Assembly: GCA_943704425.1 (NCBI GenBank)
Contig: CALSCP010000324.1
Coordinates: 22,732 to 71,915 of the forward strand
Direction of reading: 5' to 3'
Length of the DNA: 49,184 bases
DNA from: Ministeria vibrans ATCC 50519
Lineage: Eukaryota > Protista > Filasterea
This document shows positions 16,957 through 24,200 of this stretch, piece by piece (positions within the stretch are counted from its first letter, which is position 1; each line of letters starts with the position of its first letter). Position numbers and translations under genes: made by a program. Below the pieces are notes generated by a model. It saw only the letters and a list, made by a program, of their open reading frames with translations. It ran no database searches and had not been told where the DNA came from.

Positions 16957-18481
16957 ATGATTCGAAAGAAGATTGATAGTCGTGTTCGAACGATCGTTGA
17001 GAATGGCGTCAATGTAAGAATGCACCAAAAGAAAAGGAAAATGAATCGACTGAACTCAACTTGCGTCTCCTTTCTCACGCGGGGTAGCTGCGCCATCGAA
17101 CGATGTTTGTTATTGTTGGAGACCGTGGGCGTGACCAGGTGCGTGAGGCAATGCAGCCGCATTCGCTGGTGTTTTTTCGATTTCCGCGTTGCATTGGTGC
17201 ACGAGGCGGTTGTCAGGTCCGTTGTCGTCTCGCGCTCACTCTTCCTCTGCTCAGATTGTCAACCTGCACTACATGCTGACCAAGGCGCAGACCAAGGCCC
17301 GCCCCTCTGTCCTCTGGTGCTACAAGAAAGAGCTGGGCTTCACGACGTAAGAAAACGATCAGTGTCGCGCGCACACAATTCACTGCGCTTCTCCTTTGTA
17401 TTGGCCACACACACACACACTCACGCACACACACACAGTCACAAGCACAAGCGCATGAGGGAGGTGAAGCGCAAGATCCAGCGGGGTCAAGCTGAAGCGG
17501 GCAAAGAGGATCCATTTGACTTGTTCATTTCATCGACTGACATTCGGTATGTCTGGCAGATGTGGTGTGGTGTGGTTTGCTTATATGTATATGTGCGTGT
17601 GTGTGTTTAAGGTACACGTACTACTCGGACACGCAAAAGATTCTTGGCAACACGTACGGCATGTGCGTGTTGCAGGACTTTGAGGCACTGACGCCCAACT
17701 TGCTGGCGCGCACCGTTGAGACAGTCGAGGGCGGCGGCCTCATTGTGCTCCTCTTGCGCACCATGAAGTCACTCAAGCAGCTGTACACCCTGTCCATGGT
17801 ACGCACTACAGCATCGATGCTAGAAGAGAGGAAGAAAGAGGGCAAAGTGATAGAGAAAGAAGCAAATGACAAAGAGTCTTGTGTGGGGGAGGAGAAAAGA
17901 CAAGCAACGTGTTGTAAATCAAAAAAAAATTAAATAAATTCTAGGATGTCCATGGACGCTTTCGCACGGAATCGCACGCGGACGTGCAACCGCGCTTCAA
18001 CGAGCGGTTCATTTTGTCGCTGGCAACATGTCAGACATGTCTGGTGGTGGACGATGCACTCAATGTACTGCCCATTTCGTCGCATTGTCTGTCGATTGAG
18101 CCTGTTGCGAATGCGCCTGAGACACGCGAAGAGACAAAGCGAGCAGCCGAGCTGCGCGATCTCAAGGTGGCGATGGCGGACACACAGCCGGCAGGGGCGC
18201 TGGTGAGCACGGCACGGACCATGGACCAGGCCAAAGCAATCCTCACGTTTGTGGAGGCCATTTCGGAGAAGACACTGCGCAGCACTGTGACGCTGACGGC
18301 TGCGCGTGGACGAGGCAAGAGTGCCGCCCTGGGCGTTGCCATGGCTGCCGCCGTGGCCTACGGCTACTCCAACATCTTCGTCACCAGTCCGTCGCCGGAG
18401 AATCTCAAGACTCTCTTTGAGTTTGTCTGCAAAGGATTCGATGCACTTGACATGCAGGTCAGAAGAGCGAAACAAAATGCC

Positions 18482-18517
<36 letters not shown>

Positions 18518-21260
18518 GAAACCTGATTCCTTTGTTTGTCGGTGTCTCGCTTTTTCATTGTCCAGAGGAGAAGTCAAGATCACTGACTTTGGGGTAAGTG
18601 GACAACTGGCAAGCACAATCAGCTCGTGTGCGTCATGGCTAGGGACCGTCACGTACATGTCCCCCGAACGTATCCTCGGCAAGTCCTACTCGGTCGCGAG
18701 CGACATTTGGTATGGATGCAAGGAACGAGATGAGCCGCCAACTTATCTAGCGTCGATGATGTGACTTGTGTAGGTCCTTTGGATTGACCATGCACGAACT
18801 GGCCATTGGTCGATTCCCGTACAAACTCGATTCGACAGCAAAGTCACAAGATGCCGGTTTCTGGGTCCTGCTTGACCGCATTGTGGACCACGACCCACCA
18901 GAACTCAGTCCCGAGACGTTTTCACCTGAGTTTAGAGACTTCCATCGTCTGTGGTATGCTGAGAGAGCAGGTGGGTGACAGTTCGCCTGATAAGCCTTGA
19001 CTCCTTTTCTAGCATGCGCAAGGCTCCCGCCGACAGACCGTCCGCCGCTCAGCTTCTAGAGCATCCTTTTGTCAGTGCACATCAATCCGATCAACAGAAT
19101 GTTGCACTAGCACATTTCATTGTGGAGTCAATTGCAAAGAAAACCAAAAGAAATCGGCGCTGATCGAGCTTGACTATCATCTGTACACTTAATTAAAAAG
19201 AACAGCAATATTGATAATAAAAAATAATAAAATAATATTAACAATATGTTTCAGTCAAAGAGGCCAAAACCCATGTCATCGTCACTTTCTTCATCCACTA
19301 GCATTGGTAGTGTCGCAGAACCCACGTGTATCACATCATCATCAGGAAGCATTGTCCCACTCTCAGACTCAACCTTAACTTCCTCGTCATCTTCAGCTGT
19401 GAGTGCTGCCACCAGCTCGTCCAGTTCGAGCGCTCGCGCAAGTGCCCTCAAACTCGTGAGTGCATTGCGACTCGCTTCGCACGGCACCACACGCAGTCGC
19501 AGCCACTGCAAGATCAGTGCAAAAACATCACTATCGCAATCAAGAAGTACACGATCTGCACCATCGCGCTCCAGTGTGTGTTGTTCTTCGTTGAACAGTT
19601 GCGCCAGCAGCGAGCGGGGTTCGCTTCGGAGAGTTGCAAGGGTCGTCTGGAACTCGCGACCACCCACATTGAGAGTGACAAACTCGTGTGCCTTGGGGTT
19701 TAGACGCACACACATACTCTTACGTGCCTCGACGCGTTGCAGATGCGCTTCTTCCGCCTCGGCGGCCTCTCGAGCGAGACTCTCTGCCTCGGCTCGCTCG
19801 GCCTCCTCTCGGGCGATTTGGATGCCCACTTTGCACGACTCAAGGTGTGCCGCAAGCTGGTCTCGTCGCACACTTGCGGTGCACCCCGCGCTGGCAAACT
19901 GACAGAGCTGGGGCGTGGCAGGGCACTCAAAATTGACGTGGTTGCGCACCGTGGCGGGCAGGCCTTTGAAGCTACATCCCTCGGCGGCATACTGACAGGG
20001 GGTGTGCTCACAAAATGGACGATGGTCGCCCAGAAGGAGGCCCCGTGGTCCGATCCAGTCACAGCCGTGCACGCGGTTTAGGCAGTGCACCTTAGGCTTG
20101 GACAGAAGTTGCAGGATAACTCTGTTCACATCCTTGATGTCATTCAGTGGATCAATAGGCTTGCAATCGAGCGGACAGGCGCGTTTTTCAGCGAGTGAGC
20201 GCTGAAGACACTCGCCACAGAACATATGGTTGCAGGGTACGAGCTCACGAGGCTCAAAAAGAGGCTGGTGGCAAATCTTGCACAGGAGCTCGTCGTCGAC
20301 GGGCGTTGCGGAAACGTAGTCAAATACTGTGAAAGTACGGAATTTTAGTCACAAAGGGAACATGATTTCTCGCTCTTTATGCACGGAGTGTATGACACTT
20401 GATTAATGATATGATGACAAGATGTGAGGGCGTTATGAGAAGTGTTTCTGGAATGATTAGAGTTTTTGTTCACTTACCGAAAGGATTCATAAAAAAAATC
20501 CGAAGAAGAGCACCAGTGAAACCACTGCGGTGTTGCCGAGAGCTCGATGGTCTATAGAGTTCGAAGGAAAAGCCGAGCTTTACTTCAAGTAAACGAATAA
20601 AACTGAAAGTCTGAAACTGAAACTTATAGAAGAAGAATACAACCCATATTTTATTAATGATACAACTGAAACTTATTAAAAAACAGTATGCACAGTCACC
20701 CAGCACTTACTGTAAGGCAAAAATAAATGCATTTACTTTATGCACCAATTTATTTACGCCATAGTAATAATTGGGATAACTTCGCGGAGCTGAGTGAGCT
20801 CCGTCGACAAAGTTTTGTTAAAAACTTCTCTTTGTTCTTTTAAGAGCTGAGAGGGGCAGCCAGACGTGGAAGAAAAGCTTAAACTTTAAAGCAAGGAGAC
20901 TCAGGAGAGAAGGAAAATAGAAAAGGGGGAGAAAAGATAATAGAAGAAGAATACGACCCATTTATTCATGATCAGAGAAAAGATAATAGACTGTTACAAT
21001 TGTACATTTCACTTGAGTTGGGAAATAGCATTTGTCGAGTTGCGCGCCTCGGCGACGGAGAGAAAGCCCTCACGCTTGCGGCAAGCCGCAGCTTTGACCT
21101 GTAGAAAAGTCTCACGAGTCCCCGCTGCTCGCCGTGTGGCTGGGGACGGCGAACAAAGGTGCCAAGGAGGAAACGAAAGTTGGCCGAAGACGACGATGTG
21201 GGTCTCTCCGCAGCAGGTTCCTCCGTCTCCGCCTTCTCCAACTACAACACCTNNNNNNNN

Positions 21261-21291
<31 letters not shown>

Positions 21292-24200
21292 GGGGGCGGG
21301 GAATTGACACTGTTGCTTTTTTTTTCTTGCAGGAGCATACGCACTACGAGCTGGTACAATCGACAAACCCCGAGCTGAACAAAGCGGTGATTCGCATCAA
21401 TGTGTTCCGGACGCATCGACAGACGATTCACTACATCCATCCGCGCGACGCCGCCAAGCTGACACACGCTGAGCTTTTGGTGATTGACGAGGCAGCGGCC
21501 ATTCCACTGCCATTTGTGCAGGCGCTCATGGGCCCCTACCTTGTCTTCATGGCCAGCACCATCAATGGCTACGAGGGCACGGGTCGCTCGCTCTCCCTCA
21601 AACTCATCCAGAAGCTGCGTCAGCAAAGTGCCACGTCGAGTCAGCAAGGCGCATCAGTGACGGCGCGTACTCTGCGCGAGATTACGCTGCACGAACCCAT
21701 TCGTTACGGTCTGCACGATCCCATCGAGCGCTGGCTCTACCGCGTGCTTTGCCTCGATGCCGCCACCGAGTCCGCCAATGCCCCGCTTGGCAAGACGCTC
21801 TCCGCCGGCGCTTGTCCGCCCCCCGCTCGCTGCGAACTTTTCTACATCAATCGTGACACACTCTTTTCATTTCACAAGGTGCCCTCTTGCGTGCAAAGTG
21901 CGTTCGTTTGAACCGAATGAACTGAACGCGTCATTGTCGTCTTGTGTTCTTTAGGCGTCAGAGGATTTTCTGCAGCGCCTGATGGCACTCTACGTGAGTG
22001 CGCACTACAAGAACACACCTAACGACCTGCAGCTCATGTCGGATGCACCCGCCCATCACCTCTTCTGTCTGCTGGGCCCTGTTGATCCCAACGAGGCCGC
22101 TCTTCCCGAAGTTCTCTGTGTTGTGCAGGTGAGTAGGATGAATATGATCATACCGTTGGGGGTTGGGAAATGGGGGATTGTGCCGAGTGTATGCTGAAAA
22201 ATTGTACAGGTGTGCATTGAAGGAGAGATCAGCCGACAGACCATGGCAAGTTCGCTTGCGCGTGGTGTGCGTGCCAGTGGCGATCTCATTCCTTGGATGA
22301 TCTCGCAGCAGTTTCAAGGTGACCACAGTCGAGTACAGCCGAGTGTTTCATAGACACTGACAACTCATCTGTGTGTAGACAATGAGTTTGCGAGTCTGTC
22401 GGGGGCGCGCATTGTACGAATTGCCACGCATCCCGACTACTCCGGGATGGGCTATGGCACGCGTGCCCTGGCACTGTTGCAGAAGTACTACCAGGGCGAC
22501 ATCATGGGCGACCTGGCCGAGGGCGCCGGAAGCGCATCAGCCACGTCCAAAACGTACGACAAGCTGTCATCACGTATAGTTGTTATTCATTTTGGGTTTA
22601 TGATGCCGTGCTTTTTGTGTGCTGGGTGTAGGTCAACCTCGAGCAATGGTAGCGAAGGATCATCGCTTTTGGACGAGCGTCTGGTGCCGCGACGACACAG
22701 TGCGCCACTGCTGAGTCGCTTGGCCGAACGACCCGCCGAACGACTGCACTACTTGGGTGTGAGCTACGGCATGACCAAACAACTGTATCGTTTCTGGAAG
22801 AAGGTAGACACGAACACTTTACGCGTTACAGAAAACGAAATGAATCATTGCGATTGATTGATTTTGATTTTAAATTTTTGATTTCGATTTTGATTTTGAT
22901 TTTGATTTTGATTTTGATTTTGATTTTGATTTTTTTTTGTTTTTTTTTTGTAGAACGGTTTCACACCAGTGTACCTGCGACAGACAACCAACGAGTTGAC
23001 AGGCGAGCATTCATGCATTATGCTTCGTGAACTTGCAGTGGATCCGTTGCGCATGACTGTGTCCGCCCCGGAGAACTGGCTCAACTCATACTGGCTCGGT
23101 ACTCCTGCGCACCTGTGTGCATGACGACGTGATCTGACTTATCTTGTTTTTAGACTTTCGCAAGCGCTTTGTGTCACTGCTGAGCATTTCCTTTCGCTCC
23201 TTCTCAACGTCGACTGCTCTGTCCATTTTGGAGCGCTCTGGCGATGCGAGTCTCAAACTGGCCGAGGACAGTGTCGGTGCGGCAGTGAAGACGAAGAATG
23301 CGGTGGATTGATTTTGTATGTCTGTAGATTTGGACGCAAGCGATGTGCGTCGACTGTTCACTGTGTACGATGTGAAGCGACTGGAGACGTACGCAGCGAA
23401 TTTGGTGGACTACCACATTGTTCTTGATCTTGTACCTCAGTTGGCGCGACTGTGGTTCCTCCGTCAGCTCAACGTAACGTGGATGGGTTGAATTTCAAGT
23501 TGCTGATATTTTTTCGTTTTACCTTGTTGTAGGCGAGTCTGACGGCAGTGCAGTGCAGCATTCTGCTTGGAATTGGTCTGCAAGCCAAGTCGATTGACGA
23601 TCTTGAGGTACGATTGCTGCTGTGCAGCGCACAACACACACTGATTGGGCGTGGTGCACTGTGTAGAAAGAACTCAACTTGCCCTCGGCGCAACTGATGG
23701 CGCTGTTCAACAAGACGGTGCGCAAACTGACCCAGAAACTGCGCTCCGCCTTTGAGGAGGAGATTGCGGCACGTCTGCCGACACTGGCTAAGCAACGCGA
23801 GCAGGAGGTGGAGATGGAGCCGCTGCGCGAGAGTGTTGACGAGGAACTGAGCAAGGCAGGAGAGAGTGTTCCTGAGTCAACGACAACGACATCGACCGCA
23901 TCCAAAGGACCCAAGCTGCCCTTCTCGGATGCAGTGTCCTTGAGTCAGTATGCGATTGATGGCACTGACGAGGCATGGACCGAGGCGCTGGCGACCGGCT
24001 CTGCCTCCGTCGTCTCCGTTAAAGGTACGCGTTCTACCCAGCCGTGTTCTCTTTTACACGGTTACCTCAATATGTTCAAATTTTAAATGTTGCGTGTGCT
24101 CGATCGTGTTCACCCGTGCCCCATCTTGCTTTTTACTTGCTCCTTTTTCATTTTGTTTCATCTTGTTCCTCTTGTTCACTGATTTATCTATGCCCAGTCT

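What the first reader, a model, noticed from the sequence alone, without database searches (positions are those of the whole stretch)
19251..20490. E3 ligase-like protein ending in a perfect ribosomal P-stalk tail ([13 protein letters not shown]): candidate stalk-mimic decoy or trap
Seen: a RING + TRAF zinc fingers + coiled coil + BTB protein in which, after an acidic linker, the last 13 residues (within 19251-19295) are [13 protein letters not shown]. The tail is in the same exon as the BTB domain, so it is not a gene-model artefact. Established: this is the conserved C-terminus of eukaryotic P0/P1/P2 stalk proteins. It recruits translational GTPases (eEF1A, eEF2), is required for stalk-dependent GCN2 activation, and is the docking site for ribosome-inactivating toxins (ricin A chain, Shiga toxin A1, trichosanthin). 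TRAF proteins normally end in a MATH domain. KCTD/T1-type BTB domains form tetramers or pentamers and many bind Cullin 3. Inference: BTB oligomerisation would display 4-5 tails, copying the five-tail stalk. The RING would then ubiquitinate whatever docks, making this either an innate-immune bait for bacterial/viral stalk-binding toxins or a regulator of elongation factors/GCN2.
Basis: partly seen in the sequence, partly recalled or inferred. Interest (0 to 1): 0.92.

Follow-up and report, generated by a model that had tools for sequence, protein, structure and literature searches.

The report
E3 ligase with ribosomal-stalk tail
A marine protist expresses a ubiquitin-ligase-type protein that has lost its family's usual C-terminal domain and ends instead in the exact docking peptide of the ribosomal stalk, a combination I found in no other sequence or paper, so it may deliver stalk-binding proteins to a ligase.

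Summary
A two-exon minus-strand gene (CDS 20490-20478 and 20326-19251) encodes about 362 aa. It has a TRAF6-type C3HC3D RING, TRAF-type zinc fingers, a 44-residue helix and a KCTD/T1-type BTB. A disordered 36-residue C-terminus ends [13 protein letters not shown]. The genome's own P0, P1 and P2 end [15 protein letters not shown], and no other gene in the 29.7 Mb genome carries this peptide.

The tail is not an artefact. DNA contigs of two studies, two metagenome contigs and spliced RNA contigs all carry it, and the RNA confirms the intron and shows no splice in the tail.

The gene is nested among paralogs that carry pentapeptide repeats after the BTB, so that module was replaced by the tail. 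The duplication is old (dS 1.1-1.4) and the shared domains are under purifying selection (dN/dS about 0.2). The tail's codons differ from all three P genes at 7 of 12 degenerate codons, so it is not a recent copy.

No ortholog or other tail-bearing relative appeared among 1.84 billion representative proteins. The BTB is modelled as self-associating (0.64 against 0.02 for controls).

Function is untested. Most likely the tail recruits stalk-tail binders to an oligomeric RING ligase.

The parts
20491..20581 (-). 5' untranslated part of exon 1 (minimum extent)
   Evidence: RNA contig 24 of run X8 reaches 20581. The sequence between 20581 and the start codon holds no ATG.
20478..20490 (-). Coding part of exon 1: ATGAATCCTTTCG, giving M N P F plus the first base of a split Val codon
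   Evidence: Sequence. The splice joint 20326/20478 is seen in RNA.
20327..20477 (-). Intron of 151 nt, GT..AG on the minus strand
   Evidence: The joint 'skips 151, CT..AC' appears in an RNA contig of X8.
19251..20326 (-). Exon 2 coding sequence including the TGA stop at 19251-19253. It gives 357 complete codons from 20324.
   Evidence: Translation. The RNA contig is collinear from 19012 to 20326.
20163..20282 (-). RING finger of the TRAF6-like C3HC3D type (C15, C18, C31, H33, C36, C39, C50, D53 of the exon-2 translation)
   Evidence: Several Pfam RING models hit residues 15-52. The ligands are invariant among the paralogs. Foldseek matches 3hcs and 5vo0.
19833..20093 (-). Three TRAF/Sina-type zinc fingers (residues about 78-164)
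   Evidence: zf-TRAF scores 23.6 bits, below the cut-off, and Sina_ZnF 22.3 bits. Cys and His columns are invariant across 29 family members. The AF2 pLDDT is above 93, and Foldseek matches the TRAF6 N-terminal domain.
19701..19832 (-). Long helix (residues 165-208), a probable coiled coil
   Evidence: The AF2 model has a helix at 165-208 with pLDDT about 98.
19362..19685 (-). KCTD/T1-type BTB domain plus a C-terminal helix (residues 214-321)
   Evidence: BTB_2 scores 39.9 bits. PDB sequence hits are KCTD16 and KCTD9, and Foldseek gives TM 0.8-0.88 to KCTD BTB domains. The self-association model scores 0.64 against 0.02 for the best control.
19293..19361 (-). Disordered linker (residues 322-344, [23 protein letters not shown]). 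Similarity to the paralogs ends just before it.
   Evidence: pLDDT is below 50 from residue 322. The alignment with the paralogs shows where homology stops. GC3 is 0.40 here against 0.61 upstream.
19254..19292 (-). Ribosomal P-stalk C-terminal peptide [13 protein letters not shown] (residues 345-357), at the free C-terminus
   Evidence: Sequence. It equals the tails of the genome's own P0, P1 and P2 except for one missing Ser. Its codons differ from those genes. A natural variant carries a 9-nt in-frame tandem duplication at about 19270-19278.

Best explanation
This is a real, expressed, lineage-restricted paralog of a protist RING-TRAF zinc finger-coiled coil-BTB-pentapeptide E3-ligase family. 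After an old duplication it lost the pentapeptide-repeat module, which I take (inference) to be the family's client-binding part. In its place it carries a short disordered linker ending in the ribosomal P-stalk docking peptide.

Proposed mechanism. The BTB, perhaps with the coiled coil, oligomerises the protein, so several flexible stalk-like tails project from one particle that also holds several RING domains. The tails bind the proteins that normally dock on stalk tails. The likeliest clients are the cell's own off-ribosome translational GTPases (eEF2, eEF1A and relatives) or GCN2. The RING then ubiquitinates them, or the ligase is carried to wherever they are.

Shown here: the architecture, the transcription, the replacement of the repeat module, purifying selection on the shared domains, and that the tail is not a recent copy of a resident P gene.

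Inferred: oligomeric display (model only), tail binding (from published work on stalk tails), ligase activity, and the identity of the clients.
For: Architecture and disorder of the tail.

Transcription, the confirmed intron and the absence of any splice in the tail.

Independent assemblies and three haplotypes that all keep ...DMGFGLFD*.

Family context: the paralogs L006-L009, L011 and L012 and the hits P0002-P0043 carry pentapeptide repeats after the BTB. In the tree the gene is sister to P0002, with P0003 outside them (supports 100/96 and 100/98).

Selection: against the nearest paralog dN is 0.25, dS 1.1-1.4 and dN/dS 0.18-0.22 over 301 codons. The ligase body is therefore maintained.

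Age of the tail: its codons differ from all three P genes at 7 of 12 degenerate codons, including Ser AGT against TCN, and the stop is TGA against TAA. The peptide is nevertheless identical. That fits long retention under selection.

Oligomerisation: the BTB self-association model scores 0.64 against a best control of 0.02. That mark was reached by 17 of 29 eukaryotic proteins solved as pairs of one chain and by 0 of 30 solved as single chains.

Published basis for tail binding. The stalk C-terminus binds a hydrophobic groove of EF2 (PMC5887453) and binds EF1A (PMC6791870). It gathers a pool of factors around the stalk (PMC7768734). The stalk activates GCN2 (PMC6421407, PMC6919976). The tail is the docking site of trichosanthin, ricin A chain and Shiga toxins (PMC2632931, PMC5086656, PMC3280276).
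Against: No binding, ubiquitination or oligomerisation was measured.

No ortholog was found in any other organism, so conservation of the tail across species is unknown. The gene may matter only in one lineage.

The date of the tail's gain is unknown. If it came from a lost, already diverged P paralog or from a foreign gene, the codon argument for long selection weakens.

The linker is only about 22 residues, and the tail has one Ser where the resident P proteins have two.

A natural allele breaks the acidic run ([14 protein letters not shown]).

eEF2 and eEF1A are very abundant, and a single tail binds weakly. A rare ligase might therefore be saturated without any effect.

The BTB model may pass from memory of solved KCTD oligomers.
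Confidence: 0.4

Rival explanations
1. Integrated decoy. The tail is a bait that copies the ribosomal target of foreign stalk-docking proteins, such as ribosome-inactivating N-glycosidases of bacteria, other algae or fungi, or viral factors. The oligomeric ligase traps them away from ribosomes and ubiquitinates them. This would be analogous to plant immune receptors that carry a copy of an effector's target.
For: The family's C-terminal repeats vary in number and show recent unit amplification among the paralogs L007-L009, as expected of a recognition module in a conflict. In this one paralog the variable module is replaced by a host target peptide. Free stalk-tail peptides inhibit ricin A chain by blocking ribosome binding (PMC6162817), and the P1-P2 heterodimer is reported as the optimal docking site for ricin A chain (PMC5514047). 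Two IMG/VR viral contigs encode a small protein that is not recognisably ribosomal and ends [13 protein letters not shown], so the tail may also be used on the viral side.
Against: No toxin or effector of this organism is known. No RIP domain was found in its own genome, but that search rang nowhere, not even in the control genomes, so it says little. The bait would also bind the abundant host factors. Nothing here shows induction on infection. The immune reading of the family is itself only a guess from earlier first-stage notes.
Confidence: 0.2
2. Stalk-mimic sponge or competitor without ubiquitination. The multivalent tails hold translational GTPases or GCN2 away from ribosomes, which would tune translation under some condition. 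The RING and zinc fingers would serve only for assembly or regulation.
For: The tail peptide and the modelled oligomer are the same as in the main explanation. The stalk is known to act by concentrating factors around itself (PMC7768734).
Against: The RING ligands and the whole TRAF6-like region are under purifying selection. That argues for a working ligase part. The RNA contigs suggest only modest expression, whereas the factors are abundant (contig depth is a poor measure).
Confidence: 0.1
3. Evolutionary accident with no tail function. A truncated paralog picked up a P-gene 3' fragment, and the ligase body is kept for another role while the tail is neutral.
For: The gene is seen in one species only. 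GC3 is lower in the linker and tail, 0.40 against 0.61. A 9-nt length polymorphism lies inside the tail.
Against: The peptide is exactly retained although the codons differ from every resident P gene at 7 of 12 degenerate codons, while the adjacent linker shows no similarity to anything. All three haplotypes keep the terminal DMGFGLFD and the reading frame. The tail sits at the free C-terminus, as a stalk tail must.
Confidence: 0.25
4. Artefact: an assembly chimera or a wrong gene model joins a P-protein 3' end to a BTB gene.
For: The 2.7-kb piece that holds the gene is flanked by poly-T runs and an N gap, and it is probably mis-scaffolded into a NAT10 intron.
Against: Both breakpoints lie outside the gene. 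Single DNA contigs from two studies span 18525-20825 with no differences. Two metagenome contigs and spliced RNA contigs carry the BTB and the tail in one frame. The tail's codons and 3' flank match no P gene of the genome.
Confidence: 0.02

Closest known systems
RING-TRAF zinc finger-BTB-pentapeptide proteins of protists (uncharacterised; the paralogs L006-L009, L011 and L012 in this genome, and P0002-P0043 elsewhere)
   Same: The first 320 residues are homologous: 54-66% identity to the in-genome paralogs and E 1e-100. The order RING, three zinc fingers, helix, BTB, acidic linker is the same.
   Different: This gene has no pentapeptide repeats. A 22-residue linker and the stalk tail stand in their place. 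I found no paper on the family.
Ribosomal stalk proteins P0, P1 and P2 (Pfam Ribosomal_60s)
   Same: The last 13 residues, at a free C-terminus, follow an acidic run and include the casein-kinase-2-type Ser-Asp-Asp-Asp site.
   Different: There is no P1/P2 dimerisation domain, no P0 body and no Ala/Gly/Pro hinge. Ribosomal_60s gives no hit even at E 1. The protein cannot be built into the stalk in the known way.
TRAF6 and other TRAF E3 ligases
   Same: C3HC3D RING, TRAF-type zinc fingers and a coiled coil. The fold matches 3hcs and 5vo0.
   Different: There is no MATH/TRAF-C domain. A BTB follows the coiled coil instead.
KCTD9 (BTB plus pentapeptide repeats; its BTB is pentameric in PDB 5bxh) and other KCTD proteins
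   Same: A T1-type BTB with TM 0.80-0.88. Self-association is predicted. The paralogs share the KCTD9 layout of BTB followed by pentapeptide repeats.
   Different: This protein has its own RING and so need not depend on a cullin. This copy lacks the repeats.
Synthetic P-stalk peptide mimics used as inhibitors of ricin A chain (PMC6162817)
   Same: A stalk tail presented off the ribosome that can occupy the stalk-binding pocket of a partner.
   Different: Those are laboratory peptides. This is a natural gene product, joined to a ligase.

Membership tests
Ribosomal P1/P2/P0 stalk proteins (PF00428 Ribosomal_60s) | Conserved C-terminal peptide [DE]n-MGFGLFD at the free C-terminus | tested here: met
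   The protein ends [13 protein letters not shown]. The genome's own P0, P1 and P2 end [14 protein letters not shown].
Ribosomal P1/P2/P0 stalk proteins (PF00428 Ribosomal_60s) | N-terminal helical dimerisation domain (P1/P2) or uL10 body (P0), and a match to the family profile | tested here: not met
   PF00428 gives no hit at E up to 1. The regions upstream of the tail are RING, zinc fingers and BTB.
TRAF family E3 ligases | RING followed by TRAF-type zinc fingers and a coiled coil | tested here: met
   The RING models pass their cut-offs. zf-TRAF scores 23.6 bits, below its cut-off of 27. Foldseek matches TRAF6 3hcs at E 3e-9. The AF2 model has a helix at 165-208.
TRAF family E3 ligases | C-terminal MATH (TRAF-C) domain | tested here: not met
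   No MATH hit. A BTB occupies that position.
KCTD / T1-type BTB proteins (PF02214 BTB_2) | Match to BTB_2 and the T1 fold | tested here: met
   39.9 bits against a cut-off of 21.4. KCTD16, KCTD9 and KCTD17 match with TM 0.80-0.88.
KCTD / T1-type BTB proteins (PF02214 BTB_2) | Homo-oligomerisation (tetramer or pentamer) | tested here: inconclusive
   The four-copy model scores 0.64 against a best control of 0.02. This is a model only, and the pass may come from memory of solved KCTD rings.
KCTD / T1-type BTB proteins (PF02214 BTB_2) | Binding to cullin 3 | not testable with these tools
RING-TRAF-BTB-pentapeptide family of protists | Homologous N-terminal 320 residues in the same domain order | tested here: met
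RING-TRAF-BTB-pentapeptide family of protists | C-terminal pentapeptide-repeat solenoid | tested here: not met
   This gene has no pentapeptide hit. The repeats are present in P0002, P0003, P0004, P0007, P0010, P0020, P0027 and P0043 and in L006-L009, L011 and L012.

The most novel reading that the evidence does not exclude
The protein is a natural integrated decoy. An oligomeric RING ligase displays copies of the ribosomal stalk tail to trap and ubiquitinate foreign proteins that must dock on the stalk, such as ribosome-inactivating enzymes or viral factors. This would be the first cell-autonomous defence built on mimicry of the ribosome's factor-recruiting peptide. It would also be the first functional use of the stalk tail outside the ribosome.
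Probability: 0.2. Interest if true: 0.9.

Novelty: new variant of a known kind. Interest (0 to 1): 0.68.

Why it matters
The stalk tail is the common handle by which the ribosome gathers its GTPases. The stalk also activates GCN2, and its tail is the site where ricin-type toxins dock.

In the 62 papers that contain the peptide, I found none describing a natural protein that carries this handle off the ribosome. No such protein appeared among the relatives of this gene in 1.84 billion representative proteins.

If the tail works here, the protein shows that a ribosomal docking peptide can be reused as the client-recruiting module of a ligase. It would give a natural tool for finding everything that binds stalk tails in a cell. 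It would also point either to a new way of regulating translation factors or to a new kind of decoy defence.

Its weight is limited because it is known from a single organism and no function has been measured.

Tried and rejected
1. Orthologs. I searched the whole exon-2 protein, the tail region 318-357 and BTB plus tail 205-357 against 5.8 billion proteins. I ran a full HMMER scan of 1.84 billion representatives and a scan of JGI metagenome contigs. Apart from the gene's own cluster (P0001 and P0151) and in-species paralog types, the best hits were at most 39% identical. None of the top 150 has a stalk-like motif. Only the best 150 of 3203 hits could be inspected. The word-based searches are not fully sensitive: one search missed P0003.

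2. ESM Atlas: the best cluster scored 0.75, a TRAF/Sina zinc-finger cluster. It gave no lead.

3. Literature: no paper describes a non-ribosomal protein with the stalk tail or the RING-TRAF-BTB-pentapeptide family. The neuronal antigen NSPA shares only GLFE/DDLG epitope fragments (PMC2150977), so I rejected it as a precedent.

4. Recent copy of a resident P gene: rejected from the codons and the 3' flanks.

5. RIP genes in the organism's own genome (PF00161): none were found, but the control genomes rang nowhere either, so the result says little.

6. Identity of the organism. Run labels are coded, accession numbers turned up in no paper, and contig records gave no taxon. I can say only that it is a unicellular eukaryote also found in runs labelled 'algae metagenome' and 'seawater metagenome'. 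An early guess of Nannochloropsis has no support.

7. Sample accessions of the metagenome contigs were searched in papers: nothing.

8. The joined exon-1 plus exon-2 protein was not searched or folded. All searches used the exon-2 translation by reference (357 of about 362 residues), following the operators' rule.

Full report
**Observation.** On the minus strand the frame is open from 20324 to a TGA at 19251-19253. It ends ...[23 protein letters not shown]. No ATG lies in frame at the 5' end of this open frame. An RNA contig of run X8 joins 20326 to 20478, runs on to 20581, and is collinear with the genome from 19012 to 20326. The BTB and the tail therefore lie in one exon and are transcribed without any splice. 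Run X14 also holds small contigs at 19247-19435 and 20009-20231. X8 and X14 are RNA in fact, although labelled a guess: they show four GT..AG joints in three genes.

Following the operators' rule I searched only the exon-2 translation by reference (357 of about 362 residues). The joined model was never sent anywhere.

**Anatomy.**
- Pfam finds a RING at residues 15-52, zf-TRAF at 116-160 (23.6 bits, below the cut-off of 27) and BTB_2 at 216-280 (39.9 bits).
- The RING ends CPLD, which is the C3HC3D pattern of TRAF6. These ligands are invariant in the paralogs.
- An AlphaFold2 model built on 29 family members has a mean pLDDT of 88.7. It is confident for residues 1-321 and has a single long helix at 165-208. 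Its pLDDT is below 50 for residues 322-357.
- Foldseek matches the TRAF6 N-terminal region (3hcs, 5vo0) and the BTB domains of KCTD16, KCTD9 and KCTD17 with TM 0.80-0.88. PDB sequence hits agree.
- The tail is thus a flexible C-terminal extension, as it is in stalk proteins.
- Ribosomal_60s does not hit even at E 1. Only the last 13 residues are stalk-like.

**Is the tail real and special?** The 29.7 Mb genome has four sites that encode MGFGLFD.
- The other three are P0 (RL10P_insert plus Ribosomal_60s) and two P1/P2-type genes. All three end [15 protein letters not shown].
- A looser pattern adds only an internal GFGIFD in an unrelated frame.
- DNA contigs of 2334 nt from two studies (runs X1 and X2) cover 18525-20825 without a difference.
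- Two metagenome contigs from other samples carry the same gene. L020 is 99.8% identical, with one Pro-to-Arg change. L022 is 99.4% identical, with two synonymous changes, one Ser-to-Pro change in the linker and a 9-nt tandem duplication. That duplication gives ...[16 protein letters not shown].
- All three haplotypes keep the frame and the terminal DMGFGLFD.
- An assembly or gene-model artefact is excluded.

The genome holds at least six full paralogs: L006 at 66% identity, L007-L009 at 54%, and L011 and L012 at 35-39%. Each continues after the BTB and an acidic linker into pentapeptide repeats.
- The same architecture recurs in the relatives found among 1.84 billion representative proteins.
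- Similarity between this gene and its paralogs stops in the acidic linker (...[24 protein letters not shown]). After that come 22 unrelated residues and the tail.
- In a maximum-likelihood tree of the shared 321 columns, the gene is sister to P0002 (a pentapeptide protein of the L006 type), with P0003 (the L007-L009 type) outside them. Supports are 100/96 and 100/98.
- The ancestor therefore had the repeats. This copy lost them and gained the tail.

**Age and selection.**
- Against L006 over 301 codons, dN is 0.25, dS 1.1-1.4 and dN/dS 0.18-0.22. These values resemble those between the other paralogs.
- The duplication is old, and the ligase body is under purifying selection, so the gene is not decaying.
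- The tail codons are GAA GAA AGT GAC GAT GAC ATG GGT TTT GGC CTC TTT GAC TGA. They differ from each resident P gene at about 7 of 12 degenerate codons, and they use the other serine codon family and another stop codon. The flanks share nothing with the P genes.
- The tail is therefore not a recent copy of a resident P gene.
- An identical peptide on diverged codons, next to a linker with no conservation, is what long purifying selection on the peptide would give.
- The caveat is that the source and the date of the tail are unknown.
- GC3 falls from 0.61 to 0.40 in the linker and tail. This is unexplained.

**Distribution.**
- No ortholog was found. Outside the gene's own 90% cluster (P0001 and P0151) and the in-species paralog types, the best relatives are at most 39% identical.
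- None of the 150 best hits has a stalk-like motif. A scan of JGI metagenome contigs found nothing.
- The stretch occurs in runs of nine studies. They carry two coded organism labels as well as the labels 'algae metagenome' and 'seawater metagenome'.
- I could not name the organism.

**Oligomerisation.** Four copies of residues 205-325 gave a score of 0.64 (runs 0.61-0.67) against 0.02 for the best of three controls. The runs agreed in at least 95% of their contacts, and the partner's pLDDT was at least 77.
- On eukaryotes the pass mark was reached by 17 of 29 proteins solved as pairs of one chain and by 0 of 30 solved as single chains.
- Solved KCTD rings exist, so the pass may be from memory. 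It shows likeness to them, not binding.

**Mechanism.** Published work shows several roles for the stalk tail.
- It binds a hydrophobic groove of EF2 (PMC5887453) and binds EF1A (PMC6791870).
- It gathers a pool of factors around the stalk (PMC7768734).
- The stalk activates GCN2 (PMC6421407, PMC6919976).
- Stalk tails are constitutively phosphorylated (PMC11624264).
- The tail is the docking site of trichosanthin, ricin A chain and Shiga toxins (PMC2632931, PMC5086656, PMC3280276).
- Free tail peptides inhibit ricin A chain (PMC6162817).

In this family the C-terminal repeats are the obvious candidate for the client-binding part. The simplest reading is that this copy exchanged that part for a peptide that binds stalk-tail readers and delivers them to an oligomeric RING ligase. 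I give 0.4 to endogenous clients (free translational GTPases or GCN2). I give 0.2 to a decoy for foreign stalk-docking proteins, 0.1 to a sponge without ubiquitination, 0.25 to a neutral tail and 0.02 to an artefact. None of the functional steps was tested.

**Comparison with known families.** By the membership tests the protein is not a stalk protein, because it has no P1/P2 or uL10 body. It is not a TRAF, because it has no MATH domain. It is not a KCTD9-type protein, because it has no repeats. It is a divergent member of an uncharacterised RING-TRAF-BTB-pentapeptide family. I found no paper on that family and none on a non-ribosomal protein with the stalk tail. NSPA shares only fragments of the epitope.

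**Side findings.**
- The piece 18525-21252 is bounded by poly-T runs and an N gap. NAT10 mRNA splices across it, from 18452 to 21328.
- The mRNA of the MAP2K that converges on this gene continues 5' into sequence found at the end of another contig, G000:C253:13701-13730. The piece is therefore probably mis-scaffolded into the NAT10 intron. Both breaks lie outside the gene.
- A scan of 2.9 million viral contigs for ...MGFGLFD* found two contigs, of 69.5 kb and 187 kb. Both carry the same ORF of about 100 aa ending [13 protein letters not shown]. It has no Ribosomal_60s hit and matches P1 and P0 only in the tail.

**Verdict.** The function remains open. The combination looks new but is known from one organism only. 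Interest 0.68.

Noticed in passing
window 18474-18524 and 21253-21303 (flanks of 18525-21252); G000:C253:13701-13730 (L030): The 2.7-kb piece that holds the MAP2K 3' half and this gene is bounded by a 34-T run on one side and by N8 plus a 30-T run on the other. NAT10 mRNA splices straight across it, 18452 to 21328. The MAP2K mRNA's 5' part maps to the end of another contig. The piece is probably mis-scaffolded into a NAT10 intron rather than truly nested.
   Followed up: partly
L031:6481-6804 (+) and L032:498-821 region (-), IMG/VR contigs of 69.5 kb and 187 kb: These are the only two of 2.9 million viral contigs that encode ...MGFGLFD*. Both carry an identical ORF of about 100 aa ending [13 protein letters not shown]. 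It has no Ribosomal_60s hit and resembles P1 and P0 only in the last 14-18 residues. Its neighbours are a papain-like protease, a WH2-motif protein and a PQ-loop protein. It is either a very divergent viral stalk protein or a viral stalk-tail mimic.
   Followed up: partly
window 19270-19278 (minus strand), compared with L022:1854 region: A natural allele in another metagenome sample carries a 9-nt in-frame tandem duplication (TGACATGGG) inside the tail. It gives [14 protein letters not shown].
   Followed up: yes
window 20580-21100: Short sequences just upstream of the gene are extremely high-copy in the DNA runs. Summed word depth reaches 26,796, against about 135 for single-copy sequence. 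Many contigs break or join differently there, so this is a dispersed short repeat family.
   Followed up: no
L007, L008, L009 (G000:C2431, C1670, C2404): Three near-identical paralogs differ mainly in the number of copies of a unit of about 40 residues (TGANLTGATIDWSRMANTLTGVNLSGHDLSGVDLSSKDL) in their pentapeptide domain. This points to recent repeat amplification in the family's C-terminal module.
   Followed up: no
window 19164-19250: The stop codons of the MAP2K gene and of this gene converge and lie only 87 bp apart in an AT-rich spacer. One RNA contig of X8 bridges both genes, so their 3' ends overlap or abut.
   Followed up: no
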